A stretch of 63,873 nt of DNA, the filler included, from Hyphochytrium catenoides (taxonomy: Eukaryota > Protista > Hyphochytriomycota): assembly GCA_900088475.1 (NCBI GenBank). It is 7 parts of 7 records of this genome, joined end to end, with 100 filler letters (N's around TTAATTAATTAA, not from the genome) between each part and the next. Parts side by side here need not be neighbours in the genome. Positions count along the whole stretch, not along the records: positions 17,010 to 48,427 come from FLMG01001427.1; 6 more parts are not named here. One strand, 5' to 3'. A model generated the notes under the pieces. The model was not told where the DNA came from, made no database searches, and was given only the letters and a program-made list of their open reading frames with translations. A program made the position numbers and the translations under genes. Shown in pieces: positions 17,010-47,200 of this stretch. Each line of letters begins with the position of its first letter. Within the stretch, counting starts at the first letter, position 1.

Positions 17010-19815
17010 AACCCACGACATCATTCTCTCTAAGATTAGTACAGCAAACACAATTTGTCGGCAAGACTACTACAATTCTCTACCGCACCGCGCCAGTAAT
17101 GCGCACGTGAGTGGAGGTAACTTACTTCTCTTCTTCCCTCTCTCTCTCTTTTTCTCTCTCTGTCTCTCTCACATATGTATACCTGACACTCGCAATCACT
17201 CTCTCTCCTTTTTCCCTCTCTCTCCTCACCCATCGCTGTCTCTGCGTCATCAACATGGCAAGACAACGCTGTCCGCATCATCAGCAACGTCTCAGGTGCC
17301 CTGGTCGTTGGACACCTGGAGGGCCCCAGAGGCACAGACCACACTCTCTCCTATTCCTATCTGGCTTCAGGGATCTAGTCAAGAGCGAGGGCTCTAGCTG
17401 CAGCATCGGCTGTTGGTGAAGAGTGAAAAAAGGGTTCCCGCCGCAGATCCTGTTAGAGCCTTGCTCAGTCTACTTTTGACTGTCCCCTCCCGAGGCGACG
17501 ATGGAGACGGAATGATAGCTGTTAATAGGACACCGACCGCCTCGCGCTGGTTCCGACTGATCCCACTTTACTACTCTCTGTAGCTGTAGGCCTTCTATCC
17601 GAGGATGGACAAGTCTTAACAGCTCTAGACGACGCTGCTCTTTGTTGACCACCTTCTGGCACGATAAGTTATCTCTAAATGTAGAAGAGAAGTGAGATGT
17701 AGAAGTAGAGAGTCACCTCCTCGTCCTCTTCGTTGGACTCCTGCTGCTTCTTCCGTTGAGGTTACCCTTCTTATATGAGAAGAGTAAGTTAGCTATCTAC
17801 TCTCATCGCCTTCCACCAGCGTTGAGGACGCTGCCTTGAGAGTGCAACCGTCTTAGTAAAGAGTTCACTTGCACTTGCACATGGATCTATCGTGAAGTAG
17901 CTTCATCGGCTCCATGGGCTCAGTGAAGACCAACAGTGCTGCCTGCTGTCCATCTTCTTTCCTCTTAAGCACACGTCAGGAACCCTAACCCCCTATAAAT
18001 CTGTAAGATGAAAGGTCTGTCGCTCGCTTGCTGAAGCCGCCTCTCGACCCTATCCAATGTTGAAGCACATGGCCTTTATGTTTCAGGTTAGCTAAGGGAG
18101 CCACTCAATAGCTGCCGGTGCCGGGAAACCAAGATACCCATCCCGTCAAGAGAACGTGCTGCTACGAAACTTCCTAGTGTAAGAGGGGCTCATTGCTCTT
18201 GCTCTGAGTGGAGCAGTGTGTTAACTGGTAGGCCATGCACCAGTACCATCTTCTGGAGAATGGACTGCACAATCACACCCATCGCGCTCTTAGATAGGTC
18301 TAGAAAGCTAGCCTGGCCTGGCTGTGATGGCATTAACTGTGGCAACGCGCCAAATCCCATTCTGAGGAGGTAGGGTCACTGGGCAAAGGAAGACTCATGG
18401 TAACGCTGTTCAAGAGTGATTGACCAGTAGCGCGTTGATCCATCAGAGTTGCGCATTGAGCCTTATCCCAACTCCGTACTGAGCTCTGCATGTGGCTCCA
18501 ACTACTCTGACCATTACCTGCCATGCACCACTCTATCCTGTCATTCTTGGCTCCTTTGGCTGACCAAGGCCACACAGTCCTACCTTCAAGGAGACTGGCT
18601 GATCTGATGCATTAATATTCACTTGCGGCTGCCTTGGGACAAGGCCGTGCCCTCCGTCATCCTCACATTCAACAACACCGTTAGAGATGTGCCAGGAGTG
18701 GTGAGGCAGAAGAGTAAAAGGACAAATGCAGCGGGAGACGCATTGAGTTCCTCCTATAGCAGCCACCCTATTCCCTGTCTCTCTCTCTCACTCGGTCTTC
18801 TCAGTCAGGTTCCGATTGCGTCCTCTCTCCCCTTCTCTCTCTTCTCCTCGTCCTCCTTTCCGACTTCTTTAGTCGAGTCCAGCTCTTCCTGCTCTGAGCT
18901 GCGAACCTACGAGATCGCCTGAGAGAGAGAAGGGGAAAGTAAGAGACCCGTAGGAAGCTGCAACATCAGCATGATGTGAGGGAACGCGGTACAGAGACAG
19001 TGAAGAAAGAGTGTCACTTGGCTGTTGTTTATAAGGAAAGTGGGAGACTGGAAGAGGGGAGAAACGCTGACCTCTACAAGAGAGAGAGAGAGGTATCCAG
19101 GAGAGAGAGAGAGAGAGAGAGCAAAGGGGAGCAAAGAGACACAGATAAGGATCTAAGGGAAACAGAGAGAGACAGAGAAAGAGAGAGAGGGTTAGAATAG
19201 AGAGAGGGATAGAGAAAGAAAGAAAGAGAGAGAGAATATGTGTGTGAGTGTGAGAGAGGACACAGACAGAGACAGAGAGACAGGGAGAGAGGGACAGACA
19301 CACAGAGAGAGAGAGAGAGAGAGAGAGGAAGAGAGAGAGAGATAAGAAGAGACTGTGAGTGATGGGAGCTGGTCATTCTGAAGCTCTGACAGGCAGCGCC
19401 TATTACTAGACCTCAGCAGAGGTTCTAAGAGCAACAAAGCGATATTACCACTCCAGATTTCTGGATTCTGATCGATCGCTTGCATCCTCCGCGGTCGGTC
19501 GCCAGTGGGGCTGCTCCCGACCTCATGACCCGGAGCATTTTGACCGATCAGCAGCTGATAGCAGAAGGACCACCTGCCAGTGTAAGCTGCTGATGAGAAG
19601 AATCGGCATGCAGCTTGTCTGCAAGTCCTTCTACCATTCCTAGGGCGATAAGAGGCACCCAAATGGGGCTCAAGCCAGAGCTGCTATCTCTGCAATAGTG
19701 AATCCTTTCGCGAGGCCACTCTGCTCAGCCCGAGAAATGGAGCAGCAGCGTCATTGAGTCAGCTACCTTTTTTGTCATCAATAGGCTCCCTTCCTCAACC
19801 CAGGACTCGGTAAGA

Positions 19816-22800
19816 ATGAGCTTCACACAGCTGGAGGTCCTGGTAGGGATTTTGAGGAGGAGTGGACAGCTCGTATCTATCGAGAAACATCCCAGCGCCA
19901 GAGGCTACAGAGCCGTGATCGAAGAAATCCCACCTGGTGGTGAGTCCCTGTCGCGCTGAACTCGTCGGCCTCAGCTTGCTCTGTAAAGCCTCTTCACTCT
20001 TCGTGTGTCTTCGTTACTCGTCTCTGCCTGTAAGCGTCCTACCTCTTGTCGGTTTTACTTCTCCCTTTTCAGCACACTATGCCCGTGACGCACACTATGC
20101 CCGTGACTTATGGAGCTCCTAATATTTCCATCAGCTGAGAGGCAATTTTTATTGGACTTCCTTCCGGACTCCGGTGAAGAGAAACGGGAGGTCATCGTCT
20201 GCTTGTGCTGTGAGAACATCTTCTCCCCGTCCCAGTGGCTGCTTCACAAGGGAGACAGGGGAATGGAGACTGGCCATCCGAATATTATCCCCGTCACTGC
20301 TCAGGGCATCTCTGGGAAGGAGGATGAGAGACGGGAGGTGGTAGGAGGTGATATGGACGCAGACGCGCTAATGTCAGACTCCATGGCTTCTAGCGATGGA
20401 GAGTACATCCAGAGCGCGGAAGAGAAAGAGGAGAGGAGCGCTCAAGCCTCCAGAAAGCGACCACGGGTTGTTATTAGAGAGTTAAGTGCCGGAGAGGAAG
20501 ACTTAGAGGAAGTTGACGAGGAAGAGTACTCCATACATAGCGACGAAGAACCTGAGGATGCTAAAAAGGTAAAGGCCGAAGGAAGCACGCTCTGTCTGTC
20601 TGCCTAGCTTTCGTATCCTCTAGCTCTTGGTAAGAGACAGTAGTATAGTCTCTCGGCCCTAGATTCCCCTAACATCAACCCATCCCTTCCTTGCCCCGCT
20701 ACATCTCTCTGCTCTCGCAAGCCTCGAAGGTCCAAACCTGGTACGTACCGGCCCGATCGCTTTTTGTCCATCATCTGTGCTTATACTCTCTCTCTCTCTC
20801 TCACCATCTCTCTGTAGATATCACTGCAGAAGCATCACCGCAAACCGCGAAGAGGCGGAAGAGTTCCCCCAGCGCCATTGAGCAAAGGTGCCAGCCGACT
20901 CGATCCACACCTGTCCTGCAATCTGCATGGCAGACTCCCGTTATGACATGCTGCTCGCTCTTGTCTGCGATGGGTGCACCAGGTGTCGCTGTCTTCAATG
21001 CGTATGTTCTTACTTCTCCATGTGTGCCCAGGTCAATCTTTGCCACCAGGCGCTCTCCTAGGACCATCCCGGACGGCAAGTGCCTGAAATGCGGCATTGA
21101 GGTGCATGGCAGCCTAGGGGTATGACTTCCTTCCCCCCTTTCTTCTCCCCGTATGCTGAGGGCTTCTTTCCTCCTATTACTTAATATATATGTGACTGTC
21201 CTCGGACTTTCTCTGTGCGAATTGCGTTATGCAAGGCTTTGTGCACCCGCTGCTCCCAGGATGAAGGTACGAGGACGACTCCAGCAGAAAGTTACGCAGA
21301 AGACGACAAGGAAAATGAAGGTTGGCTCACGATGTAATGGCTAAGCCAAGGAAATCTTTGGGGAATAACGCCAACTACTTTGCCGTTTATGCTTTGCCAC
21401 TTGACATCTGCAGCTGAGGCTCCAGAAGGATGCCGAGTGTGTTTCAAGGGCAATCTTGAGCATACCATTCTCCTGTGCGACGGTTGTGATGCGGAGTACC
21501 ATCTGCACTGCCTTAAGCCTCCTCTCTACGTCATTCCCGAAGGTGAATTTCCTTATCTGAGATCCTTTCTCTTAAGCTCCCTACTGTCTCTCGATCAAGA
21601 GGTTTTATGGAAGACGTTTAAAGAGACAACCCAAGAATATGTTTGTCTTCCTAATTGGATGTCCAACAGTTCATTAACACTTCTTATCTCTCACTGGTGC
21701 TTTGCCTTCAAGGTAACTTTTACTGCATGTACTGCGCGCCATTTGGTCGTGCACGTCTCTCAACGAATGGAACGGACCGCGGGAGGAGTTCGGCAGGCCG
21801 GACATACCTCGGTGCTGCTTGCAGGGGAGTTACATGCTACATGCAGAAAGACTGTAAGGGCTCAATATCCTGACTCTCCAGACGCGCTATAATTTCCCCA
21901 ACAACCTTCTCTCGTCAGATCTTGCCTTACGCAATTCAGGACTACGTATTGTATGACCGTATGGCAACCCTCAGACGTCCGCTAGTCTTTCATCTGCTTC
22001 CCTGAGACTATCATTGCGATCTATCCCTTCTGCTCCCTTGGGCTGCTTGCATTCACCGTTTCCCTTTTCAGCTTCTCATTATCCTAGTGCAATTCAATAA
22101 CACCCTATCTCCTCTACCTCTGTAGCCACCCTGCTTTTTCGCTCTTACATCGGAAGTAAAGGCATGAGGAAATCATTAGGAACCTATAGCAATCTTGAGC
22201 AGGTGCGAAAGTGATCGCCATACCAATGACACCTCGTTCCTGCGGCTTAACGCCTGGCGCGTCGTTGCGGAGGCAGGACGAAACCGCGCCGGATTGCTTC
22301 ATCCTTGCGCGTTGCACTTACTGAATGTCATACCGACACCCCTGACCTCTACCCCGTCGTTCCTTTGAATGCCAGGCAGCAGATGCGTACGACCAGGCTG
22401 CAATGCGCTTACACGGGGAAAAGGCCATCCTCAACTTTCCAGAAAAGTATGGCTTACCTCCTGACGAGTCTAAACCTCCCCTAGATTTAGCTGAAGCGAC
22501 TCGAAAGCTCGTCTCTTATCGCACCGCTCGTGAGGAGGACGAGATAGAAGAGGGACTAGCGCAAGAGGACTCAGAGCAAACAGGGAGAGGCCTATCTTGT
22601 GATGTGCACAGAGAGATGCAGGAAAGCCTAAACAGACTACAGGTAGTATGGAGCCCCTTTGTTGCGCTCTCATCCTGTCCTCCTCACTAAGTTACCTGTG
22701 GAAGACAGAGGTTCCTTTTTCCTAGATTGGCGCTCCTTGTTCGGGCTCCGCTGACCCTTTCCTCACGTAGCCATAATTCGCATCGCTTGATTTCCTCTTT

Positions 22801-25800
22801 TGCTTCACACTTGCTTGCAATCTAAGCGTTGGAGCCCTAAATTCTATCTAACATACGTTTTCAAGTTTATCATGGCCTCGGTATCCTGTGCATGTGAGCG
22901 ATTGCTCCCCACTGCCGCGTCTCTTACCCCTGCGCTCGAAGCGTTTAATACAATGAAAGAAAAGATTCTGAAGGACCTCATAGACACTGCTCAGGCGTAC
23001 AAAGAGAGCGAGAAGGATTTTCGAGAAGCTAAGACGGCAGGAGAAGCACTGGGTGCCAGGATATCTATGGTCTCTTATCTCTCGGAGGCCGATCTTAAGA
23101 AGAGTCTTCGTCTATTTCACCGTTTCCTTCCCACAGCTGAAGTTGGGAAGAAAACCCCATTTAGATCTCCTCAACAGTTGGAAGAAGCACAGGCAGATAT
23201 ACATAAACTGAGGGAGGCCGATGTAACAGGTATTATCAAGAAATTAGGGCCTATCAAGCCGAAAGACCTCTCTTAATGCTCGGCTCCTCGCTACACTTTA
23301 TTTACTGGACCCGTTGCGTACTTCTGCCGTTGGATATCACCCGTCTATCCTCCAGCTCGTAATTTCATCTCGTGATTTCACTAGAATATTTCCTGACCCA
23401 GTCGTCCTTTCGGTTTAACCTGCTCTCTTCGCCCCATGACACCCCGTTGTCTCTTTGGCTTCCCGCGTTCTGCAGCATCTAAAGAGTGGCATGCAGTCCT
23501 ACAATCAGTGCACAACTCATTTCAGGAACTAAAGTCTGCGTCTCAGAGTGACGTCCAAACCCTAAAGCGTTGGTCTTCTGTCTCAAATCGTTCATCATCT
23601 CCATCCTCCGTACAGACTCCTTCCGCCTTGAAAACGAAACACGCTGTGACGTGGTACCATCAGCTCCTTCGTATTCCCTTTGTTTATAAAGGGAAACTTA
23701 TATATCGGTTTGGTCTGGTAGAGGAGCCCTGGCAACTTGAGGACCTCTCCGAGGTTGAGACGGTGAATGTAAGGGTTTTCTTCACCGAGTACGAGAGTGA
23801 AGGACTGGTGAAGAAAGAGAAGGCCCTGCTCTCTTTATTACGTTCTCATGAGGTTGGCGAAAATCCCTCTTCTCTGACAGTAAGAGACAGACGGAGAAAA
23901 GCAAGGGAATCCCTACCAGACAGTAGTCTTTTTCCTGTCACCCCTGATGATCTAAAGAAATATGTCATCAGCGACAAAGACTATTATTTCCTAGCAAGGA
24001 CTGCAACCACATCCTCATATCAAAGAGGAGATGGTGCAGAGAGCGCAGGACTTACGACTACCCCAGGAAGGAGACGGAAAGAATCAATGACACCTATGGA
24101 GATCGAGGAAGATGACGCAATAGGAGATCAACTGGAAGACAGGGAGGATGCGACCAGTGCACCAGGATCCATTGACGTGACAACGGAGAATGTTGAAGTG
24201 CTGACTCAAGATACCAAGCATAGACAGCAGGAGATCGCAGTTCTACATCAAGAGCTTGAGATAAGTCGACGCTCTCTCGTGTCGTTGTCGCACAAGCTCC
24301 TAGAGATCACCACATCACCTTCAATAGATAAGTATGAGGCTGTGAAGGTTGAGAGAGAGGACGTTAAGAGGAAAAGCAGGGACTATACCATGGTGCGGGA
24401 CATGATGAAAGGCATTAGAGAGAAGTTGATAGAGGAGTATGGGTCCAGCTGCGGAAATCAGGTAAGCATTAAACTTCTGGCTACGTTCTGTGTTAGAACC
24501 TCTTGCATCGATACCGTCACGTCCGTACGAAAGGGTCTTCTAGGTCTGTCAATCTGCATGTTGGCATCTCGTAAGGATACAAATCGTAGGTTTCGCTGAC
24601 AATTTCTTATGACTCTGTTGGCTCCGCGTACCCTATGCTGTTCTCTCTCCCGCCATGTGTCCATTCCCTTTTGTAGTGGAGTGTAAAATCCCAGGTCCTG
24701 GCGTCTCCGTCAATTTCAGCAGCCTTATCCGGCTTGAAGGATTGGATACAAAGTCTGCATCTTGAGCTTGACTACTTTTACGGTGAGCTTCGAGAGATGG
24801 AACCCGACGGGCTCGAGAGGGAGTCAACCGGACTAAACAGAGAAGTAAAGAAAGCCCCTGAAAGCACCAGAGAGGAGGCTCGAGACGGTGGGCTTTTGAA
24901 GGGCGACGCAGTGAAAGCAACTGAATCGAAGGGACTCGAAGAGACAGTAATGAGAACTGTTGACTCCGAGAGAGACGGCAACAGCACTCCAGAAGGGTTT
25001 GAAAACCCAATGGAGGAAGGAGACGGTAGATTAGAGGTTTTGGTGTCCCATTATAAGGAGTTCTACATCCAAGAGCTCCTCTCTCTCTGGACCAAGAAAG
25101 CTTACACTCAGCAGGCTCTCTACCTCCTTCGCCGTTATGCCAACGTTGCAAGCGTCGAGGACCTGAAAGTCGACAGGGAAAGCGCTGAACGACAGGACGA
25201 TTTGGATAGATTGACGAGGCAAGGCAGAAAGAGGGTATTAGAGGAGGTCTTGGCAAAGGTCGACGGGCTATTGGAGGAGCTTGACGGACCAGTATGGCTA
25301 AGTCTCGGTGAGATTCGTAAGCAAAGAGACCCTCCTTGTTGTGCTACCCTTTTCAGTCTTCAACAGTGGCATTGCTCCACACTTGCGCAGTACCTGCTGA
25401 CCGCCATCCAGAGGATTCATTAAAAGATTGTTCCATTCTTGTCCACTCAACCTTACTCCATTAGGCACCTGGGCAAGAGATACCTGGAACAAACGCACGA
25501 AGCATGGTGCCTTGAGCCGGCAGACCTCCGTCTTTTATCACAACCTGTGCTTTGAGCATAGAACTCCACCGCAACACCCGGAGAGTCACCTTCGACTACA
25601 GGTGAGCATCTTCTCGTGGGCTCTTACCTCGCTCAGCTGCTAAACGGCTTATATCCGCCTTTTCTCGTCCATCCTTCGTGGTGACGCACAATAACCTTCC
25701 CGCTCTTCTCTCAGATGGTGCTTCGTGCCATCACTGATTATATCCAAAGAGTGCAAGAAGGACAGCAGATCCGCATAGAGAAGCTTACGAAAAGCTACTT

Positions 25801-28800
25801 CGATCTTGTTCCAGAGGAAATACTGCTTTTATTGGTAAGCTGCTGAGCAATAAGCAAGCGATGGATGCTAGTTACGTGGCTTACAGAAGAATATACCCTC
25901 CTGAGAGCGGCTCCGCTAAAGGTTAATGGACCCCTTTCCTTGGCTTAACAGGTGCACTCTTACGACTACATGCGAGCTCTTAGGGAGACGGCGATGACTG
26001 CCTCTACGGAAGGTAAGTGCTACAGGGCGGATCTCGGTAGCTTTAGCCACCCGAGGTTCCATGAGTTTGTCACGCTTTGCCCTTCCGACTCAAAATGAAG
26101 TAAAACAGCTTAAGCAAACATCATGCCAGGAGCTGGGAGACATACATGAGCTTTCAGAAGTCAGGCCCCTGACACAAACTTAAATATAGGAACCCAGCTA
26201 GCTTTCGAAGTGAAGGAATTAGCTAATTTCTGCGGGCCGAAAGCGTGGGCAGAGGAAGAGACTCCAACCGAGGAAGGATCGCAACAAGAAGGACGCAGGG
26301 CGCTGTCGGATTCGCCTCAATCTGATAACGTCAGTGGAGAAGAAAGAAAACCAGAGCACCAAGCGGAAGAGACTGGTGCAGTGGAGGAAACAGCTACAGC
26401 TGAGCACGCGCAAGCTCCTAATGGGAACGTATGGACTCTTACTCTTTGTCGTACGCTTCGGAGTTACCAGCCGTCACTGACAGCTCCGCTTTGTGCAGGC
26501 GATACTTCAAGTGGAGGCCGTCTCGATGAGCACCGTGGAAGAAGGAGGACCTGGAGATGATAGCGGCAAGGAACATGCTCTTCAAGAGCTGCAAGTCTCT
26601 GAAATAGGTGACAACGTAGGATTAGTAGACGAGCCAGCAACCGTAGAGACAGATCGAGAGAAGGATGACCTTGCACCGAGTCGCATGGAAGACATCGATA
26701 CACAAGGACGGGAAGACAGTACAGTACAGAATGTCTCGAATGCCGACGATAACCGTCCTGAAACTCAGACAGTACAGAGTACGAAGCTCGAAGGACCACC
26801 TGAGACCGATGATAAAAGCGTGGATCAGAAAGGCGACGAAGAATCCAGCTCCTTCCCAGCTGGGGACGGCCCAAGACAACTTGGACAGCACCAAGCCGCT
26901 AAGCAGAGTTCCGGAGGGCCGACTGACAATGACACTCCACACGTACCTATCGAAGTTTCCGACGGGATTGCTTGCACAGAATCGGGCAGAGAAGCAGAAC
27001 TAGCAGGAAAGGAAGGCCTTCACGTCGTAAGAAAGGTTTTAAACGCATGACTTTCTTGAGAAGCTGAATTCAATTATCAATCCTCACCACCTCATGTGGC
27101 CCTTTTTTATGCTTCTTTCTTGATGCTTGACAGGCGGCATCTAGGGCATGCCCTTCTAATGAGAATCTAGACCAATCCATGATAGAGGAAGGGAAGAAGA
27201 TGGCACTAGAAGATTCTTTGCTCAGGAACAAGGTAACCGTTAGGTTGAATATGCTCTTCAGAAAGCCTTTACCTACCTCTCTTGTTCCGATACCTATTCT
27301 GGGCCAAGCTCCCGGTTCGAAGTTTCTCTAGCTCTTCAAAAGTGGGACTTGAAACCATCCCCTCATGCTTCATGTCCAAGAGGATGTTGCTAGTTTTGCG
27401 CTTTGACCATCTTTGACTTGATAGGATGAACCCATGGAGAATCCCACTGAAATGGAAATGGAGCTCTCAGCACAGGAACCAAAGGTAGTGAGGCTTCTAC
27501 CCAAACAATGCGTTTTCTTGAATAGAACCTATCTCCTCAAACCTTTTCTCCTGTCACCCTCCTTATTACCCTGATTCTCTGTCACGATAGCATCCGCTCT
27601 TTACCGGTACTTTCATCCTTTTCCACAACGTCCTGCTGGGGCGTCTTTACTAATCTACCTGTAAACAGTGTGCAGCCGGGAATGCGGCAAAGGTACTTCA
27701 GGATGCCGTCCCGCTCTGTGGCAGCCCATACCTGGAGCTTGACCTTATGTGTCAAGAAGACCTGCGTTCACATGAGCAAGTAATAGCGCACATCTCTATT
27801 CAGTCCCGTATAGGCCGCTTGCATGCCTTCTCATGTCCTTTCGTCTCGGCTCTCATTCTCCGGTCAGGACCCAGGTCAAGGTCGCAAGGGCCAAGGCATC
27901 AAGGTGTCTGGGGAGAAAAAAGAAAGCACTGAGGACGGAAACCTAGATATAAGGGAAGATAAGGAGAATGGGGCCTCGCCGACGGCATCATCTGAAGATG
28001 AGGGTGAGCTCAGGAATAGAGAAACGACCAGAACTCTGCTGACAAAGACGACAGGGAGCGGCCACAAGAGCGAAAGTAAGAATCGAACCTTGACAGATTT
28101 AACCTCAACTCTGCCATCTTCTTCCATCGCTGCCATTGTACTCTGCACCCTCCCTCTCTTTAATACTTTTGAAGAGCTCAGCTTTCCTTCATCACTCGTT
28201 TGGTGACCCTTTGTTCCAGTAGCCAATAGCTTTTTGGTAATTGACATAAGCCCCAGGTACGCCTCACCAATCTTCAACGTATGTGAGCGCCAAGTCATGG
28301 GCGGCTGCGCTAGCAGCGGTGGGCACTCTGTGCGAAGCGGTGGCTTCAATATTGGAAAAGAGGTGCAGAAATGCTCTAGCAATAGTTCGACCGCCAGGTA
28401 AGTTGACATAGGACATTGGGGATCTTATGATTATTGAGGCTTCGGCTCTTACTCCCATCAATGCTGCCTCTTCCCCTTCGTGACTTTAATGCCTTGACAC
28501 GCAAATCCGCATGTGGTGGAGTCTTGTCACCCTGCGTATGTAGGCTACCATCTAGATTGGCTAACTTTTCGTATCTCCCTAGGCCATGGAGTGGGTCGCC
28601 ATGGTGCTCCTTTCCTGTCCTCGTCTACATCCTTTTCTCTATTGAACAATGTGATGGCGGCAACTGTTTTCGCTCGGCTCACTCCAAGTGTGCGACGAGT
28701 GGCTATCATCGACTGGGGTCGTTATACTGGACAGGGAACAATGGAGCTGGCTGAAGGAGATACAGAAACTCTCTTCTTACAGGTAGTACATTCTCTCTCC

Positions 28801-29388
28801 TAACCTCATTGTACCTGACCTTGAGCTCTAGTTTTGAAAAGTCACTCGCTAGGTCAAGCATGGAGCTAGGACTGATAACTGTGGTGCACCTGGAAATGGC
28901 CTCATCCGGAGAGAGTAAGAGGCAATCATTTTAAGCTTCGAAAACAGACTTAATGCTCAGCTCAAACGACCCACGTTTTTTCCCCTTGTGCATTCCCGTT
29001 GCAGGTGTGTCCGGTGGCATATGAAGGAAGAAGTATGTCCCAGCGTAAGACGGTTTGCCCCAGATTTGTTGATAATCTCCGCTAGCTTTGATAGCCCTGG
29101 CGATGTCCCGGGAGAAGGCAAAAGCCTAGACCAAGAGGTAAGACTGCGATGGCAAGACCCAGATATCAACCGGCAGCCGGTAAGAATCCGCCCCTGGACA
29201 GAGAAACTCACAAACGTGATGGTCTCCGCTAGGATTATGCTTGGGCTACTGCCCAGCTGGCTGCGCTTGCAGAGGAGCTGTGCGACGGCCGCTTACTGTC
29301 TGTCCTGGAGGAGGGATATGATAAAGGGACTGAGATGTCTGCCCTCACTGATTGTATTGTGGCGCACTTGAAGGCGTTGGCGTCGTGA
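19816..29388 (+). CDS. Large multi-exon chromatin protein: N-terminal C-x-C-C/SPSQW Zn-like motif + PHD finger + AP2/ERF DNA-binding domain + degenerate class II-like HDAC domain
   Basis: Phase-consistent GT-AG chain of more than 20 exons from ATG 19816 to TGA 29386-29388. PHD CRVC...LLCDGCDAEYHLHCLKPPL.VIPEG|NFYCMYC (21414-21542, then 21713-). AP2 CRGV...FRSYIGSKGMRKSLGTYSNLEQ|AADAYDQAAMRLHGEKAILNFP (21713-21853, 22126-22202, 22376-). HDAC motifs HPESHLRL, VHSYDY, NALAIVRPPG, NNV, RVAIID, FAPDLLIISASFD, GRLLSVLEEGY. The 5' exons and the small exons are less certain. Confidence 0.85.
20072..20107 (+). repeat. Perfect 18-bp tandem duplication (GCACACTATGCCCGTGAC x2) in intron 1 of the HDAC-like gene
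   Basis: Read directly from the sequence. Confidence 0.9.
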
Positions 29389-29843: not shown

Positions 29844-31301
29844 CTAAAGGTTGTCAGCGCAATTTGCGGCAGGAGGATTAGCGGGATCGGACCTATCACC
29901 AAGAGGTGGAGTCTTGAAAAAGGGAGAGAGAACCTCGCCCATAGGAAGGTAGCTGTGGAGAAAGGCAGAATTGGCCCTCGATCCCAGATAGATCAGTACC
30001 CCAATCGTGGCCAGGACGGTCCCTACCATATTTACCGCAGTGAGAGGAACACCCCAATATAGAGGTAAGATGATGCTCAGCAGCACTCTTCGGAACGCTT
30101 GGAGTACTGAGAAGCTCAGTGGTGAAGTGCGCGCAAGGACCATAAAGCTAAGGGCAGAGTAGATATACTGGGATAATCCACATGTAAGCAAAGAGAGAAC
30201 CGAGCCGGAAGTAGTCTTGGACGTTAGGATTATGGAAACTTCGCCACTGATGGGGAACAAAGGCATTCCCAGCACGAAGGAGAAGCAGCATAATGCCCAA
30301 TGCAGATTGATGTCGTCCAGGATCCGTTCCTAGGGCAAGGGGAAATTGAAAACACTCTGTTAACGGGAAGGGAGGTGGGACTGCATGGGAAGCAGCACCG
30401 AAGCAACACAGAATATGGTCGTGATACACAGATTCAGCTGAAGACATCTCTCCCTCCTGCCCGGGAATGCGGCACGCACGTCAGACCATAAAGGATAGTC
30501 TCAAGAAAGCCTTAGTGCACCACAATGTACCTGCAATAAGTAGCCAGAAAACACTATCAACAGGGCCATTGATATGTTGGCTATCGCGGCGGAGAGGACC
30601 TCCATGAGCCCTACGGACTCTGCTCTCAATGATGATAGAACAAGGCCCAAACAGAGCGGCACAAGTGCAACAATTCTAAAGACGGAGGTATTTTGCTGGA
30701 TCAAGAGGACAGCGAAGCCTGCTGTGAGAGCGGGTTCAAAGGCTAAATGCATCTGCGCATAGCTCTCGCTCCCGCCGCCAAAGTTGGCGTTTGTGCATAG
30801 AGAGCCGAAAGCTTGACAGAGAGACAGTCCCAGGACGTATCTTGTCTTTGTGCCAAGGAAGGCTTGAGTTGGATAAAGCTTGAGGACGTAAAGAATCAAA
30901 AAGCCGCTTATCGCAGAAAGAGCAAACTGTGCCAGCGTTAGAATGACTGGAAGCCGTGTCCCTCTCACGAAGTCAGCACCCAGCACCTCAACGAAGAAAG
31001 AGAAGACAAAACATCCGGCGTACAAGGCTCCGATGACAGCTGGGCTGTCTCCTAGGGCGACCGCAGCCGTATCGATAGTACTCAGTCCCCTTCTTCTCTC
31101 AGGCATAGAGTGAGCACCATCTTCTTGGTTGGGAATGACTACTGCCGAAAGCTCTATCTCTGATAATAGGGGCTCGGACGACAGCGAGAGTCTTCTCTTC
31201 TCAGGGGAAGGCCCACCTTCTCCAATACTTCCATTGATTGCAGCAGTAAAATCCTCCTCAGACTCGGCGCTTCGCCTTCGCTGAATCATTTCCTGAGGCA
31301 T
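29844..31301 (-). CDS. Triose-phosphate/nucleotide-sugar transporter family (TPT/DMT) membrane protein, 2 exons, ~418 aa
   Basis: Exons 31301-30531 and 30329-29844, joined by a phase-0 GT-AG intron. Multiple TM helices; motifs PVILTLAQF, FEPALT, LVPLCLG, TSPLSFSV...RRV, NMVGTVLATIGVLIY. Confidence 0.85.
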
Positions 31302-31439
31302 ACTAACAGAGGCCACTTCTCCTCAGCATGATGAGGCACCCCAGTCCATACGCAACCCTCCTAACGACGTGACTGGAAGGGGGCTCTCCAGACCAAGCCT
31401 CTCACCTTTCTGCAATCATCCAAGGCAGAGAACGCATTT

Positions 31440-33260: not shown

Positions 33261-34004
33261 TTACCAAAGAGAAAAGCTTGGCCAGTAGCTGGACTCTGGC
33301 TTCGTCCCTTCCTCCAGGATTTGCCGAATCTTTGCGAAGATGCTCTTGGGCCCCATCTCCCCAACATAATAGAGTACAGACGGGGGAATAGAGCCATTCA
33401 GGTTCATGTGAGCGATAATGTTGATCTCTGTGAGATCGTCAGTTATCGAACGGAGGACGTAGCCAATAATGTACGCATGACCACGCACAAAGTCAGCTGG
33501 CCGAGGATCGTGCGGGTGCTCAATGGAGCGGGACGCAATGACGGTCATCCTTTGATCTTCCAACTCGCTAACATGTGTCAGCACTATAAAGTCTCTCGCC
33601 GCGACGACAGTGTACGACACCCCCATCGCATGCCGTACTTCGGTCCAATCGTCAATTTTGTCCAGACAATCGGTTCTTTGACAAGAATCATCGAACTCCG
33701 GGATCCTGTCCAGGTCAATGACCAAATCACGTACGGCATGCCGCGGGGCTTTAACCTTTCCGACGGCCTTCAGGCATGGCCATTCGTTGTCTGGAGCAGT
33801 TCCGACAAAAAAGTTGACATCGTCTTTAAGTCCCTTGTGCTCCCAGTAGTTGTCCACAAGGTCTTCCCCGGCAAGTCTGGCCATCATGGCGTCGATATTT
33901 CCCTTCGCATAATCCCTCAGCTCTGAGTGGAGCTTTAGTCGGTCTGGTTCACTCATAACTGGGACGTCATCGGCCAGCTGGGGCTCTACCTCCTGGTTGC
34001 TCAT
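33261..34004 (-). CDS. START (SRPBCC) lipid-binding domain protein, 247 aa, intronless
   Basis: W...K....V, CLKAVG, RIPEFD, VAARDFIVL, IASRSIEHP...P..DFVRG, GYVL, NLNGSIPP are START signatures. First ATG at 34004. Confidence 0.88.
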   Translation of the reverse strand: MSNQEVEPQLADDVPVMSEPDRLKLHSELRDYAKGNIDAMMARLAGEDLVDNYWEHKGLKDDVNFFVGTAPDNEWPCLKAVGKVKAPRHAVRDLVIDLDRIPEFDDSCQRTDCLDKIDDWTEVRHAMGVSYTVVAARDFIVLTHVSELEDQRMTVIASRSIEHPHDPRPADFVRGHAYIIGYVLRSITDDLTEINIIAHMNLNGSIPPSVLYYVGEMGPKSIFAKIRQILEEGTKPESSYWPSFSLW

Positions 34005-34869
34005 GTTACCGGTCTGTCCTGTCAGTCCGCTTTTTTCAAAAAGGCTCAGCTTCCGATGCTCTGGTCTAAGTGCCAACGCGTTGTCCAGGAGGTAATATAG
34101 AGAATGAGGTCCAGAGCTGGGCAGACGCTAATCAGATGTGCGCCTCCGTCAGTTGCAACTCTGAGGAAAATGTGCAATAATCTTCATCCCCCTGCGGCTG
34201 TCTATGCAAACGGCAGGGAGGAATACCTGTGAAGGAAAGTTAGTGCCAATCAGCAGTCGGACAGTTAGCATCTGGCGGCGAAATATCGGGGCGGACAGGG
34301 GCTTGTTAGGGGCAGGTGGACAGGTCAGAATCAGACGTATTACTACTTTACGTGTCACGAGCGTTTATCTGAGAATTGACGTATTTCGCTTAACAAAGCC
34401 AATCGAACTATTATTCCACAACGGACATTTCTCATTATTCCTCTTTTTCCTGGATAGATTGTTATCATCATTGATCCTAGCCTCTTATTTATGTACTTAT
34501 TCCGGACACAGGAGGTGGTGGCCTCTAACGGCAAGCTTGGCTGCCTGTTTACTGTACTCGCCTCATTCTTCAGAGTCACAAACAATCACATCAACCCTCT
34601 GGTCGGTCTCGGGCTCCTCATTATCAATGATGATTGTCGACAACGTCTCAAGGCAATAATGAAGCTCGGTACTACCAAGGGTACCAGGTGGTTGGCTAGG
34701 TTAACTCACTCATATTAGTGATTACTAGGATATTAATGAGCATCCATAATGGCGTTACACTGCAGCCAAGCGGTCAAAAACTCTGCAGCTTTGGCTCTTC
34801 TCTTATTCGGGAATCAAGTAACTGGGAGAGTGGAGGGACGGAAGGGCGAGGGAATGATAACGCTACATC

Positions 34870-35778
34870 TTAGATCTTGGTAGAATCAGATCCGCAATAG
34901 TTGTAGATAGCTCTGCCGTTGAGAGGCTGTACATCCCTATTGTTGAAGTTCAGGAATGGTGCCTGTGGAAACGCCAAGACCTGCGAGAGCTGGGTAGTGA
35001 AGATGTCTGAGATAGAAGCGTAGACAGTACTGTGAAGTACAACCCAGTCAACGTTCTCTGTGCACGGAGACCTTGTGAGGCTTCCTTCGTAGTGATAAAA
35101 TCCCTTAGACATGTCCATAATGGCTCCAAGATCCAGCGGCTCCTGAATTATAAGCCCCTTCGGACTTCCATGGCCGTAAGTGTTAATCTGTTCTCTGGCA
35201 TAGGTGGAAATCTGGTTGAAGACATATTGCTGCTTCTCTGCATTGCTCATTCCGCCAGAGCGACGGAGATACTCAGAATCATGTCCAGAAGTAGCATTGT
35301 GAGTTTCAGGAGTGTGAATGAACTGCCCGATCACAAGCTTGCTGTCATCATCAGCTGCATGAACAAAGTGAAGCTCCATGGGGGGTCTGGAGCCCATTAT
35401 AGTGTGCTCTGCAAGGTAGTGCAAGTGGGCATTGATGAGCTTGTAAGTCTTGTTTTTCCATTGTATTTTGTAGTTGTCAGGCTTAAGGACAGCGATGTTA
35501 AGTGGCCCATTCACTTGAACTTCGAGAGTTCCCGGAGGGATGACGCCGTGCTTTACAACGAGATGCGTTGACTGGGTGCACTCTGTCGGTGTCGGAGGGA
35601 GTTCAATGGGTGACTGCCTCTTACCAGCACATGTGCCGCAGGCTGGCTCCCCCCAACGACCCTGCTCAATATAGTTGAAACAGTAGTCAGGCCCACTGCC
35701 ACCGTCAGCCTGTGCACATGAAGCAAGCAAACCAACCGCCATAGCGGCGCAGATTGCGACAGTCTGAAAGCTCACCAT
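34870..35778 (-). CDS. Secreted alpha-carbonic anhydrase, 302 aa, intronless
   Basis: Signal peptide; CAGKRQSPI; Zn ligands in AHLH and MELHFVH; AEHT; YHYEGSLT; NNRDVQPLNGR. Confidence 0.92.
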   Translation of the reverse strand: MVSFQTVAICAAMAVGLLASCAQADGGSGPDYCFNYIEQGRWGEPACGTCAGKRQSPIELPPTPTECTQSTHLVVKHGVIPPGTLEVQVNGPLNIAVLKPDNYKIQWKNKTYKLINAHLHYLAEHTIMGSRPPMELHFVHAADDDSKLVIGQFIHTPETHNATSGHDSEYLRRSGGMSNAEKQQYVFNQISTYAREQINTYGHGSPKGLIIQEPLDLGAIMDMSKGFYHYEGSLTRSPCTENVDWVVLHSTVYASISDIFTTQLSQVLAFPQAPFLNFNNRDVQPLNGRAIYNYCGSDSTKI

Positions 35779-43800: not shown

Positions 43801-44191
43801 ATATACAGAGGTAGGTAAGGCATCATTGAATGGAAGGTAGGTAAGCCATCGTTGAATGGAAGAAGAAAAGTGACTAGAGGAGCAGTATTAGAAATATACT
43901 GAGGCGGATCAAATCGAAGATCTGACCGGTGACGCGCATCCGTGAGAAATGAGTTAAAGTGAGAGAGAGCTGAAGAGGTGGATAGCTGTAACGCAAGCTA
44001 ACCAGATCCTAGTGTTACTCACTCTGAGGGATGTGTCTCTTCGTTCTAGTTCCCTCTCCATGACCGCGATCTTCTCTTCAAATTGTGCTCTCGCCTGCGC
44101 CAGTTTCAATGGTGTTATAAGATATCTAACCGTAGGAATTTGTATTCAAACGGGCCGACTCATGTTCTCTCTCTCCTCTCTCTCTTCTCTC

Positions 44192-44246
<55 letters not shown>

Positions 44247-47200
44247 ACATTTGGCTGCCTCTCCGTTTCTCTCTGGCGCTTGACTCCTCTTTTCTTCCCC
44301 TTCTCTTCCCTTCCCTCCCCTTCCGTCTGGGTTTATAACCTTGGACGAGAGACCCCCGCTTGTCGGTGACTCATACTCATCTAGCCTAGCCTTTAGACTA
44401 GCCTCCGAAGTTCTCAGCTGAGCACAAAATTAGTTTGCGACCTCCAGGCAATGAAGCAAATGATGAAGTACAGGCATTTTAAATGAACCAGGGGCTGAGG
44501 TATCTTTCATTGGGAGAGTTGGACATTGACACGAACGAGGTAGATTAATACGTCGATCAAACCTGCTGAAGCTTGTCCTCCAGGTCTTCCACAACCTTCT
44601 CGTTTCTTGCGATTTCGTCTGCAAGCTCTACCTTGGCCTGCAGAGAAGTTGGACTGTTAGAAATCAGGATCACAGTGATAACGTATGGCCTAGAGGTGTG
44701 ATGGAAGGTGAAACAGGTACAGACTTCCAGTATCGTCTGCAATTCTTCCGCTATCCCCTTCTTATCTCCATCTCTTCTACGTTCTCGCCCCCACAAGTTG
44801 GCGCTCTCTCCTTCTGTATGGAGACACATCTCTTACTCTTTTGTCCTACCTGGGCCAGCTGTTGCGTCAAGGCAGCTTCAGCTTGCCTCGCTTCTTCCAT
44901 CACTGCATTTTTCCGAGCGACAGCTTCAGTAGCTTCTGTGACTGTATGGGCATGTTAGTCAAAGGCACATGACGGAGGTATTGCTAGATGAAGGGTACCG
45001 GGAATGATAGGCCTAGAACGATTTATAAGGGAAAGGAAGACGTGGACATGTAGGCTGACTGAAGTCTAAAACAGGGAAACGGAGTGGGAGATAAATCACA
45101 GCCCTTAGAAGAGAACAGGACGGGGAGGTACGTAAGGAAAGTAGATCTCACGTGTGGTCCTCACGATTTCCAGCTCCGCCTTAAGAGACGACTCGGTTTG
45201 GTAGGCGTTGCCAAGAGCCTCTTCGAGCCTTTTAGTAGGTGTACATGCAAATCAGCTAGCTTAGCGACAGGGGGATGGAGTTTCAAAAGAGACCACACAG
45301 AGCAGGGACAGAGAGAAAAAAAGCGAGCGAGCGAGCGAGCGAGCGAGAGAGAGAGAGAGAGAAAGAGAAAGAGTAACATGAGAAGCAACCATGAGGCGGA
45401 GGGAGTTCGAGGGGAGATATAGCAATGGTAGAAGCATAATACGATAGAACTTACTTCCCCAGTCGTTGTGCCTGATGCTCCATGGTAGCCACATTCCTTT
45501 GCCTGTCTTCAAGAGCCTTCTCCCTCTACCATAGTGTGGATTGTTAGTGCTACAAGGCAGGCGACGGAAGTCGGCAAAACTGAAATCGGAGCACAACGTC
45601 TGAGGTCCAACCTGCATAGAGGATTTGGAGAAGACGGGTGATCGAGAGAGTATCATGCTACGCCCTTTACCTCCTCTCTTAGATGACAAGCTTCCACTTC
45701 GATCCTCTTCAGTCGGAGTACCTCCTGGTTAAGCTCTCGAACAATTTCCATCAGCTTCGAGAACAAGAGAAGTCTTTTAGCCAAGCAGCCAAGAACTTAA
45801 ATTCAAGATCTAGTCATTGGGGGACAGAGTAGGTTGATACAGAGAAGATAAAGAAAAGACGAGGATGATTCACTCAGGGAGCAAGAGAAAAAGATGCGCA
45901 AAGGAGACAACGTAAGGGGGAACGTCCTTTCACCTCGTTGTTCCTCTCCTTCGCATTTTCAAGCTGCCTTTTGAAGTTGTCCTCTCTTTTCTGGAACATC
46001 TCCTGAACTTCATTCTTCCGACTGATCAACGTGTTCTTTAATTGGGCGATCTCGCCAAGGAGAAACTCCTGCTCGCTCTTCTTCTCTGCCAAAATACTCT
46101 CTTTCTCTTCCTAGAGCCAAGAAAGCCAGGAAGTGAGCACTGGATCGCTTCCTCACCCTTTGGTGCTCTTTGGCTACACTGCCGCCCCCCAGGCTATGGG
46201 TGTCAATCTCCAACCATAGTGGCATGGGCATGTCTACTTAAGTTTGCGGCTAACCTTTGCTCGAAGCAACTGCATACTGAGCTCCCAGGCTTCTTGGGCT
46301 TTCATCTTTTCGCTTTGTTTGCTTGCATCTAACTGCACGCGTATCTCTGTCACGCGATCGTCCTAGGTTTGACCGGAACCATAGGACAGACATATGAGGA
46401 AGGTGCCGGTCCCAAACGACGAATGACACTACTGAGAGTAAGAAGACGGCTAAAAGTCGCCGAAAAAGGCACAGGTTGAAGAAAGTGAGAGACAAAAAGA
46501 AGGCCAAAGCGAGAGAGAGAGACGAAAAAGAGAGAGACAAAGATGGAGCATAATGGAAGAGAAAAAGGTGCCTGCGAGAAATCTTACCTCTCTATGGATG
46601 AGCTCATAGCTCCCACCGCATCTCTCGCAGTTCGAGAAGTTAAACTTGAGATCCTTTGGCGCAAATAATCGAAGAAAGGGCCTCATATCGAAGGATGGAA
46701 AGGAGGTCTGAACATGCTTCAAGTCGACCGAGTAGTCCTTTCCCTGAATCTTTTTATTCAGCAGTTCATCCTATGAGGGCACCATTCAAGAAGAGGAACG
46801 TCATAGATGTTATACATACACAGCGCGAAAAAGAGGAGACAGAGATAGCAAAGAGAGAAAGAAGAAGAGAGAGAGAGACTAACAATGATAGAGGAAGAGG
46901 AAATAGATAAGAGCTTATTGTTGTCCAAGACGTTGTACTGTCTGGCCAAACAGATTGCGCCAAGTTGATCAATCATTCACCCGGAGCACGAGAGAGAGAG
47001 AGAGAGACAAAGAGACAGAGAGACCGAGAGAGACACAGAGAGAGAGAGACAGAGAGAGAGAATTCTTTCGTTCACGGAGACAGACAGGCTAAAAAAGGAT
47101 CGAATTGAAGGTGGCCAATGTCACATGTAACCAGGTACAGCGATGTCTAACAATGAAGAGAATGACTGAAAGTTGAAGCGGCAAGAAGGGAAGCAGATCA

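What the first reader, a model, noticed from the sequence alone, without database searches (positions are those of the whole stretch)
21414..29388. Single polypeptide fusing a PHD finger, an AP2 DNA-binding domain and an HDAC fold
Seen: an unbroken, phase-consistent exon chain links the PHD (21414-21740), an AP2 domain split over three exons (~21815-22443) and a C-terminal HDAC domain (~25500-29388). The complete AP2 domain appears only after splicing. Inference: a self-targeting chromatin regulator combining a histone-mark reader, a sequence-specific DNA binder and an HDAC-fold module. I recall AP2/PHD-HDAC fusions being noted in oomycetes, so the architecture may be a stramenopile family rather than unique; this needs checking.
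Basis: partly seen in the sequence, partly recalled or inferred. Interest (0 to 1): 0.72.

Follow-up and report, generated by a model that had tools for sequence, protein, structure and literature searches.

The report
PHD–AP2 protein with dead HDAC fold
A multi-exon gene of an unsampled protist appears to encode one long protein that joins a histone-tail reader (PHD), a plant-type AP2 DNA-binding domain and a class II histone-deacetylase fold that has lost two of its three zinc-binding residues. It is most likely a DNA-tethered scaffold or reader rather than an enzyme, but no transcript data could be obtained to prove the single transcript.

Summary
A PHD finger, an AP2 domain that exists only after splicing and an HDAC domain ending at the TGA at 29386-29388 lie on the + strand. 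They are linked by a GT-AG, phase-consistent exon chain with no internal stop.

Three things are added:
- The gene probably starts upstream, at ATG 20110, with a NINJA-type TDBD motif (Pfam PF16135).
- The HDAC fold is degenerate. The conserved D-W-D-x-H-H-G is D-W-G-R-Y-T-G here, so two of three Zn ligands are lost. The His-His dyad is broken and about 20 residues of an active-site loop are missing. I read it as a pseudo-deacetylase.
- 2.2 kb inside the HDAC domain (26013-28256) is either one long intron or about 310 aa of acidic exons.

Oomycete class II HDACs with PHD, two AP2 domains and a C-terminal Med27 domain are published (PMC5112689). This gene has one AP2, no Med27, a TDBD and a dead active site.

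Verdict: new variant of a known kind, moderate interest.

The parts
20110..20568 (+). Probable first coding exon: ATG at 20110, then a TDBD (NINJA C-domain type, V-C-x-C-C...F-S-P...H-K-G) and an acidic tail; donor AAG|GTAAAG
   Evidence: Pfam PF16135 E 9.1e-6, 26.0 bits against a cut-off of 23.6. The frame opens one codon before the ATG. An (AG)90 microsatellite at 19164-19342 lies upstream.
20569..21413 (+). Unresolved 5' section. One in-phase path uses exons 20722-20740, 20818-21119 and 21260-21320. It contains NLS-like K/R runs and a Cys-rich stretch resembling a degenerate PHD half.
   Evidence: DP paths differ with the penalty used. No Pfam hit. Manual reading of the sequence.
21414..21542 (+). 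PHD finger exon, first six zinc ligands (C-x2-C...C-x2-C-x4-H-x2-C); entered in phase 1
   Evidence: Pfam PF00628 E 3.2e-8; junctions verified.
21713..21853 (+). Exon with the last C-x2-C of the PHD (21724-21735), a short linker and the first AP2 strand (C-R-G-V-T-C-Y)
   Evidence: Direct reading; intron 21543-21712 is GT-AG, 170 nt. This exon alone gives no Pfam hit.
22126..22202 (+). AP2 exon 2: strands 2 and 3 (L-F-R-S-Y-I ... K-S-L-G-T-Y)
   Evidence: Phase-consistent GT-AG introns on both sides. Pattern only: no PDB or Pfam hit for this 25-aa piece alone.
22376..22642 (+). AP2 exon 3: C-terminal helix (A-A-D-A-Y-D-Q-A-A-M-R-L-H-G-E-K-A-I-L-N-F-P) and the start of the linker
   Evidence: phmmer against PDB: ERF096 5wx9 E 4.5e-4, AtERF1 2gcc/1gcc E 0.02-0.03.
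22866..23229 (+). Linker exon 1 (121 aa). Its donor CAG|GTATTA lies 44 nt before the TAA at 23274-23276.
   Evidence: Codon log-odds are best in this frame.
23476..24461 (+). Linker exon 2 (328 aa) inside a 400-aa stop-free run; no known domain
   Evidence: Longest open frame of the region, beyond all shuffles. No Pfam hit. Zero hits among 1.84e9 representative proteins. Atlas search found nothing. AF2 single-sequence pLDDT 44.
24677..25307 (+). Linker exon 3 (210 aa; acidic, then helical-looking). Its donor TCG|GTGAGA lies before the TAA at 25421-23.
   Evidence: The 248-aa open frame exceeds the shuffles.
25465..25601 (+). First HDAC exon (..F-Y-H...H-P-E-S..). It has no ATG in frame and is entered in phase 1 through the best acceptor of the neighbourhood.
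   Evidence: Local HDAC profile positions 102-133, E 0.015. Acceptor in the top 1.1% of AG sites. The ORF listing finds only a TTG start.
25715..25834 (+). HDAC exon 2 (helical N-terminal part)
   Evidence: GT-AG, phase 0. Continuity with the next exon (..L-L-L-L | V-H-S-Y-D-Y..) read directly. No hit alone.
25952..26012 (+). HDAC exon 3 (V-H-S-x-x-Y motif); strong donor AAG|GTAAGT, leaves phase 1
   Evidence: donor score 10.0.
26013..28256 (+). Unresolved 2.2 kb inside the HDAC domain. Either a single intron (a direct splice is in phase) or acidic low-complexity exons 26542-27026, 27134-27232, 27425-27484, 27702-27779 and 27868-28075 (about 310 aa, 23% D+E).
   Evidence: DP paths. 26200-27000 is purine-rich with 14% T, like the gene's acidic exons. 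Its 189-aa open frame is within the chance range. No repeat elsewhere in the piece.
28257..28397 (+). HDAC exon ending in R-P-P-G. Its acceptor is weak (28256, or 28250 as an alternative).
   Evidence: Pfam PF00850 E 6.2e-8. HDAC6 E 4e-9. Acceptor scores -4.8 and -6.3.
28583..28782 (+). HDAC exon with the degenerate catalytic core: G-H-G-V-G-R-H-G in place of G-H-H-A, and I-I-D-W-G-R-Y-T-G-Q-G in place of I-x-D-W-D-x-H-H-G-x-G
   Evidence: Gapless alignment to HDAC6. All 14 metagenomic HDAC relatives carry D-W-D-[LVI]-H-H-G-N-G-T. Pfam PF00850.
28853..28914 (+). Short exon (20 aa) standing in for a loop that is about 20 residues longer in canonical HDACs
   Evidence: Phase-consistent GT-AG introns. 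The local profile jumps from position 284 to 327.
29005..29137 (+). HDAC exon with the retained third zinc ligand (S-A-S-F-D-S for S-A-G-F-D-A)
   Evidence: HDAC6 alignment; Pfam PF00850 positions 214-240.
29233..29388 (+). Last exon: L-E-E-G-Y (catalytic Tyr kept), end of the HDAC domain, TGA at 29386-29388
   Evidence: 5ji5 alignment E 3.6e-6. Pfam PF00850 positions 255-294 of 298. A convergent TPT gene ends about 460 nt downstream.

Best explanation
One gene on the + strand, about 20110-29388, has 19 to 24 exons and GT-AG introns mostly of 70-270 nt. It encodes a nuclear protein of about 1,480-1,790 aa. The domain order is N-terminal TDBD motif, PHD finger, one plant-type AP2 domain, a lineage-specific linker of about 750 aa, and a C-terminal class II HDAC fold.

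Shown: the domains, their order and strand, the in-phase chain, and the loss of catalytic residues.

Inferred mechanism: the AP2 domain places the protein on specific DNA sites. The PHD finger (AIRE/CHD4-like spacing, no aromatic-cage Trp; judged from memory of these families) holds an H3 tail. The HDAC fold has lost two of three Zn ligands and an intact His-His dyad, so it cannot deacetylate. It would act instead as a docking or acetyl-lysine-binding module that recruits or regulates an active co-repressor, as proposed for vertebrate class IIa HDACs. It is therefore a DNA-tethered co-repressor scaffold, and a variant of the PHD-AP2-HDAC fusions described in oomycetes.
For: Domains.

Chain:
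- Every intron is GT-AG and there is no internal stop.
- The four linking junctions are stable in the DP model.
- Linking donors rank in the top 0.2-7% of GT sites, scored with a matrix trained only on the nine domain-anchored introns.
- At three of four junctions the best donor and the best acceptor are mutually in phase.
- Codon log-odds are highest in the proposed frame for all three linker exons.
- The 400- and 248-aa open frames exceed the shuffles.

Against a gene boundary inside the span:
- The non-open gaps between linker frames are only 41-120 nt, the size of the gene's introns. The one clear intergenic gap nearby is about 460 nt.
- The first HDAC exon has no in-frame ATG.

Dead enzyme: D-W-G-R-Y-T-G against D-W-D-x-H-H-G in HDAC6 and in 14 of 14 metagenomic relatives, plus a gap in profile positions 285-326.

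Precedent for the architecture: PMC5112689.
Against: No homologue spans the linker, so the fusion has no comparative support.

Weak points in the chain:
- The acceptor of exon 28257 scores at the median of AG sites.
- At junction 22643/22865 the in-phase acceptor is only second best.
- Three of four in-phase best pairs has a chance probability of about 0.11 (my arithmetic).
- The 5' section 20569-21413 and the 2.2 kb at 26013-28256 are unresolved.

The first two AP2 exons have no statistical support on their own, and the spliced domain was not searched. The functions of the PHD and the HDAC fold are inferred from residue patterns only.
Confidence: 0.6

Rival explanations
1. There are two or more adjacent genes. 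A TDBD-PHD-AP2 transcription factor ends at TAA 23274-23276 (intron 23230-23475 not removed) or further on. A separate HDAC-like gene starts at an ATG in the linker, for example 23436 or one of the Met codons in 24677-25307.
For: An ATG at 23436 opens a 387-aa ORF. Read-through past the donor at 23230 adds only 15 codons before the TAA. No transcript or homologue ties the parts together. The phase statistics are modest.
Against: The gap between the TAA at 23276 and the ATG at 23436 is 159 nt. It would have to hold a 3' UTR, a promoter and a 5' UTR, whereas the convergent neighbour lies about 460 nt away. Consensus donor and acceptor sites flank each stop in the right phase. The first HDAC exon lacks an ATG and starts at a strong acceptor.
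Confidence: 0.22
2. The HDAC part is a decaying relic. The ancestral fusion lost its enzyme, and the tail is drifting or no longer translated, so the degenerate residues, the deletion and the weak acceptor are signs of pseudogenisation.
For: Loss of Zn ligands and of the dyad, a deletion of about 20 aa, a weak acceptor at 28256, and a 2.2-kb interruption.
Against: All eight HDAC exons keep open frames and GT-AG borders in phase. The frame ends at the canonical end of the domain. Non-catalytic core motifs are well kept: R-P-P-G, L-L-N-N, R-R-V-A-I-I-D-W, S-A-S-F-D, L-E-E-G-Y.
Confidence: 0.1
3. The HDAC domain is still an active deacetylase or amidohydrolase that uses replacement ligands, for example His in G-H-G-V-G-R-H-G and the Tyr that replaces the His ligand.
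For: The third Asp ligand and the catalytic Tyr are kept. Two His residues remain near the dyad position.
Against: In the arginase-deacetylase fold the Asp-His-Asp triad is invariant in active enzymes (established knowledge). It is present in all 14 relatives fetched and in all PDB hits aligned. Gly cannot ligate metal.
Confidence: 0.06

Closest known systems
Oomycete class II HDACs with an N-terminal PHD, two AP2 domains and a C-terminal Med27 domain (Wang et al. 2016, BMC Genomics 17:927, PMC5112689)
   Same: The order is the same: PHD, then AP2, then a class II Hist_deacetyl domain in one predicted protein. The best PDB matches of the HDAC pieces here are class II as well (HDAC6, HDA1, Clr3, HDAH).
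   Different: One AP2 domain was found here, not two. There is no Med27, because the protein stops at the end of the HDAC domain. Here there is an extra N-terminal TDBD, a linker of about 750 aa without relatives, and a catalytic site that has lost two Zn ligands. Whether the oomycete proteins keep their catalytic residues could not be checked, and orthology is untested.
Vertebrate class IIa HDACs (HDAC4/5/7/9) (review PMC12383505)
   Same: A class II HDAC fold with crippled catalysis that works mainly as a scaffold or acetyl-lysine reader. It is brought to DNA by a sequence-specific factor and recruits an active HDAC complex.
   Different: Class IIa enzymes keep all Zn ligands and change only the catalytic Tyr to His. 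This protein keeps the Tyr and loses the Zn ligands. In class IIa the DNA binder (MEF2) is a separate protein, whereas here the AP2 domain is fused.
Plant AP2/ERF repressor, NINJA, TOPLESS and HDA19/HDA6 co-repression (established knowledge, not tested here)
   Same: The same parts list: an AP2/ERF DNA binder with a plant-like helix (hits ERF096 and AtERF1), a NINJA C-domain type TDBD motif and an HDAC module.
   Different: In plants these are separate polypeptides held together by EAR motifs and TOPLESS, and the HDAC is active. No EAR motif or TIFY partner was looked for or shown here.
Plant TDBD-PHD proteins (Pfam PF16135 together with PF00628)
   Same: A TDBD motif followed by a PHD finger at the N-terminus.
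   Different: As I recall, the plant proteins continue into a GNAT acetyltransferase domain. This protein continues into AP2 and an HDAC fold.

Membership tests
PHD finger (PF00628) | C4HC3 zinc-ligand pattern with canonical spacing | tested here: met
   Pfam E 3.2e-8 for ligands 1-6. Ligands 7-8 (C-M-Y-C) are supplied by the next exon in phase.
AP2/ERF domain (PF00847) | C-terminal amphipathic helix A-x-A-Y-D-x-A-A...G...A-x-L-N-F-P | tested here: met
   Exon 22376-22642 against PDB: ERF096 E 4.5e-4, AtERF1 E 0.02.
AP2/ERF domain (PF00847) | N-terminal three-stranded sheet (R-G-V ... W/F-x-A-x-I ... L-G-x-F/Y) and a whole-domain profile score above threshold | tested here: inconclusive
R-G-V-T, F-R-S-Y-I and L-G-T-Y are present in order, with spacing within one residue of AtERF1 (reading against remembered sequences). 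The single exons give no hit.
Zn-dependent class II histone deacetylase (PF00850) | Sequence similarity over the whole fold | tested here: met
   Five collinear matches covering Pfam positions 68-294 and local profile positions 102-411. The best PDB hits are HDAC6, HDA1 and HDAH.
Zn-dependent class II histone deacetylase (PF00850) | Asp-His-Asp zinc triad | tested here: not met
   The first Asp is Gly and the His is Tyr in a gapless alignment. Only the third Asp is kept.
Zn-dependent class II histone deacetylase (PF00850) | Tandem His-His general acid/base (R-P-P-G-H-H-A) | tested here: not met
   The sequence reads R-P-P-G | H-G-V-G-R-H-G with a six-residue insertion. At most one His can align with the dyad.
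Zn-dependent class II histone deacetylase (PF00850) | Catalytic Tyr in G-G-Y | tested here: met
   L-E-E-G-Y aligned to L-E-G-G-Y of 5ji5.
Oomycete PHD-AP2-AP2-HDAC-Med27 proteins | Two AP2 domains and a C-terminal Med27 domain | tested here: not met
   Only one AP2 was found. No Med27 hit appeared in any exon scanned, and the stop codon follows the HDAC domain directly.
Oomycete PHD-AP2-AP2-HDAC-Med27 proteins | Orthology of the HDAC and AP2 parts | not testable with these tools
   No oomycete sequence could be fetched. The word search only reaches proteins of 0.55-1.75 times the query length, and the exon queries are short. The paper's supplements list no such entries.
TDBD (PF16135) | Profile score above Pfam's gathering cut-off | tested here: met
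   26.0 bits against 23.6, E 9.1e-6.

The most novel reading that the evidence does not exclude
An all-in-one co-repressor of an unsampled protist lineage. A class II HDAC fold that has lost its metal site has been repurposed as an acetyl-lysine reader or docking module. It is covalently tied to an AP2 DNA binder, a PHD histone reader and a NINJA-type TDBD. This would be a natural 'Rosetta stone' predicting that AP2 factors, PHD readers, NINJA-like adaptors and HDACs act as one machine in SAR protists and plants. It would also be a naturally zinc-less HDAC pseudoenzyme with a built-in DNA address; I found no described example in the one literature search I ran for this, which is not a systematic check.
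Probability: 0.3. Interest if true: 0.65.

Novelty: new variant of a known kind. Interest (0 to 1): 0.5.

Why it matters
AP2 factors in plants and in alveolates silence genes by recruiting HDAC complexes through adaptor proteins. A natural fusion of AP2, PHD and an HDAC fold states that partnership in one polypeptide. The loss of the zinc site suggests the HDAC fold has a non-catalytic role (reader or scaffold), which is still debated for vertebrate class IIa HDACs. If the single transcript is confirmed, the protein offers a simple system to test what a catalytically dead HDAC fold does when tethered to DNA. It would also extend the PHD-AP2-HDAC architecture beyond the oomycetes in which it was noted.

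Tried and rejected
- phmmer of the 400-aa linker frame against 1.84e9 representative proteins gave zero hits, not even the protein itself.
- The word search with AP2 exon 3 found no candidates.
- Taxon identification through neighbouring genes failed. The alpha-carbonic anhydrase has relatives of at most 31% identity, all unnamed or distant. The TPT transporter has nothing at E 1e-5. The exact-product look-up found nothing, and there was no Rfam hit.
- The Atlas search of the linker found nothing. For the HDAC exon it returned only generic HDAC clusters.
- An AF2 single-sequence model of linker exon 2 had pLDDT 44 and was not searched further.
- The metagenome scan with the degenerate HDAC exon returned only canonical, mostly high-GC and probably bacterial HDACs. 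None shares the G-R-Y substitution. They served as references.
- The ab initio DP model is unreliable as a gene predictor. With low intron cost it over-splices into 46 exons. With high cost it skips proven domain exons. It was used only to test how stable the junctions are.
- A TE or repeat origin of the 2.2-kb interruption was rejected, since there is no second copy in the piece.
- Exons were searched one by one by reference. Joined translations were made only inside scripts, to check phase and stops.
Full report
**Setting.** The piece (17010-48427) is eukaryotic. It has about 50% G+C, (AG)n/(TC)n microsatellites and GT-AG introns. Searching or folding the joined protein was left out. Joined translations were made only inside scripts, to check phase and stop codons.

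**The three domains.**

PHD:
- Pfam PF00628 matches the frame holding 21414-21542 (E 3.2e-8).
- That exon carries six of the eight ligands.
- A donor GAAG|GTGAAT at 21543 and an acceptor at 21712 (170 nt, phase 1) bring in N-F-Y-C-M-Y-C, which completes the C4HC3 pattern.

AP2:
- The same exon runs on to C-R-G-V-T-C-Y and ends at 21853.
- Exon 22126-22202 adds L-F-R-S-Y-I ... K-S-L-G-T-Y.
- Exon 22376-22642 adds the helix A-A-D-A-Y-D-Q-A-A-M-R-L-H-G-E-K-A-I-L-N-F-P.
- All three joins are GT-AG and in phase.
- The third exon alone matches plant ERF structures (ERF096 E 4.5e-4, AtERF1 E 0.02).
- The first two exons are too short to score alone.
- The complete AP2 is therefore supported by one significant piece plus ordered motifs and phase, not by a whole-domain score.

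HDAC:
- Pfam PF00850 matches 28250-28408, 28498-28800, 29006-29137 and 29233-29385 in profile order.
- A profile I built from 11 HDAC-family ORFs fetched from metagenomes gives five collinear matches, from 25506 to 29382.
- The best solved relatives are class II: HDAC6, HDA1, Clr3 and HDAH.
- The frame ends with TGA at 29386-29388, at position 294 of 298 of the Pfam model.
- A convergent TPT-transporter gene ends about 460 nt further on.

**The chain between them.**
- Three long open frames lie between AP2 and HDAC on the same strand: 161, 400 and 248 aa.
- The 400- and 248-aa frames exceed anything seen in 300 shuffles that keep local composition.
- Each frame-ending stop is bypassed by a consensus pair:

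| Intron | Donor | Acceptor |
|---|---|---|
| 22643-22865 | CAG\|GTAGTA | |
| 23230-23475 | CAG\|GTATTA, 44 nt before TAA 23274 | TTCTGCAG\| |
| 24462-24676 | CAG\|GTAAGC | |
| 25308-25464 | TCG\|GTGAGA, before TAA 25421 | CCATTAG\| |

- All four are in phase.
- Scored with matrices trained only on the nine introns anchored by domain continuity, these donors rank in the top 0.2-7% of all GT sites and the acceptors in the top 1-26% of AG sites.
- At three of the four junctions the best donor and the best acceptor in the neighbourhood are the in-phase pair. That alone has a chance probability of about 0.11, so it supports the chain but does not settle it.
- A dynamic-programming model kept these four junctions at every intron penalty tried.
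- Codon log-odds, trained on neighbouring genes only, are highest in the proposed frame for each linker exon.
- The stretches that are not open between the frames are 41-120 nt. That is the size of this gene's introns and far too short for a 3' UTR plus promoter.
- The first HDAC exon has no in-frame ATG.
- My full model has 24 exons and 1,791 aa, or 19 exons and 1,481 aa without the acidic insert. It has no internal stop and every intron is GT-AG.

1. *The gene probably starts upstream.* An ATG at 20110 opens an exon with a TDBD motif of the NINJA C-domain type (Pfam PF16135, above the gathering score). It is preceded by an (AG)90 tract at 19164-19342. An in-phase path links it to 21414, but the exons between 20569 and 21413 are not settled. 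An alternative start at ATG 21389, in frame with the PHD, cannot be excluded.

2. *The HDAC fold is not enzyme-grade.*
   - In a gapless alignment the invariant I-x-D-W-D-x-H-H-G-x-G of HDAC6 reads I-I-D-W-G-R-Y-T-G-Q-G here.
   - All 14 metagenomic relatives that share the preceding R-R-V-A-I-I-D-W carry D-[LVI]-H-H-G-N-G-T.
   - The Asp and His zinc ligands are therefore Gly and Tyr.
   - R-P-P-G is followed by H-G-V-G-R-H-G instead of H-H-A, so the His-His dyad is broken.
   - About 20 residues are missing between profile positions 284 and 327.
   - The third Asp ligand (S-A-S-F-D-S) and the catalytic Tyr (L-E-E-G-Y) remain.
   - By the established chemistry of this fold, a site with one of three ligands cannot hold the catalytic zinc.

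3. *The HDAC domain is interrupted by 2.2 kb (26013-28256).*
   - A direct splice is in phase and would give a compact domain. It would, however, be ten times longer than the other introns, and its acceptor is weak.
   - Alternatively, five exons rich in Asp and Glu (about 310 aa) can be threaded through in phase.
   - 26200-27000 has the purine-rich, T-poor make-up of the gene's other acidic exons.
   - Its open frames are within what such composition gives by chance.
   - This stays open.

**Relatives.**
- The 400-aa linker frame has no hit among 1.84 billion representative proteins.
- The neighbouring carbonic anhydrase has relatives of at most 31% identity, and the TPT gene has none at E 1e-5.
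- The organism therefore belongs to a lineage absent from the collections, and I cannot say whether it is a stramenopile.
Oomycete class II HDACs with an N-terminal PHD, two AP2 domains and a C-terminal Med27 were described in 2016 (PMC5112689). I found no other paper reporting the combination.

**Mechanism.**
- Shown: the domain content, the order and the residue losses.
- Inferred: AP2 gives the DNA address; the PHD finger binds an H3 tail; the zinc-less HDAC fold serves as a docking or acetyl-lysine-binding surface, as discussed for class IIa HDACs (PMC12383505); the TDBD offers a further protein contact. Its spacing is that of the AIRE/CHD4 group, without the Trp of K4me3 readers (my recollection, not tested).
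- Rivals: two adjacent genes (0.22), a decaying HDAC tail (0.10) and a still-active enzyme (0.06).

**Verdict.** This is a new variant of a known architecture. Interest is moderate (0.5) until a full-length transcript and a test of the dead active site are in hand.

Noticed in passing
window 20072-20107: A perfect 18-bp tandem duplication (GCACACTATGCCCGTGAC x2) ends three bases before the probable start codon at 20110. Each copy contains an ATG in another frame.
   Followed up: no
window 19164-19342: An (AG)n microsatellite of about 90 units lies upstream of the gene. Similar (TC)n/(GA)n tracts occur at 44166-44242 and 46990-47061 and may mark intergenic or promoter regions in this genome.
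   Followed up: no
window 20900-21100: A Cys-rich stretch looks like a PHD finger split between two frames. One frame reads ..L-L-A-L-V-C-D-G-C.., and the next reads ..F-N-A-Y-V-L-T-S-P...I-P-D-G-K-C-L-K-C... This could be a decayed first PHD, a one-base assembly indel or chance. There is no Pfam hit in either frame.
   Followed up: partly
window 34870-35778 (-): An apparently intron-less alpha-carbonic anhydrase with a signal peptide (Pfam PF00194, E 1e-27). Its nearest database relatives are only 25-31% identical.
   Followed up: partly
window 33261-34076 (-) and 29847-31322 (-): A START-domain gene and a two-exon TPT-family transporter gene. The TPT gene is convergent with the HDAC end, with about 460 nt between the stops. 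The TPT piece has no relative at E 1e-5 in the word search.
   Followed up: partly
window 24636-25343 (-): A 236-aa stop-free frame lies antisense to linker exon 3. Its codon log-odds are lower than in the sense frame, so it is probably a shadow of the coding strand.
   Followed up: partly
window 21338-21889 (+): The frame of the first PHD exon stays open for 184 codons through the PHD intron. Intron retention would therefore give a protein without the last zinc pair and without AP2, rather than a quick stop.
   Followed up: no
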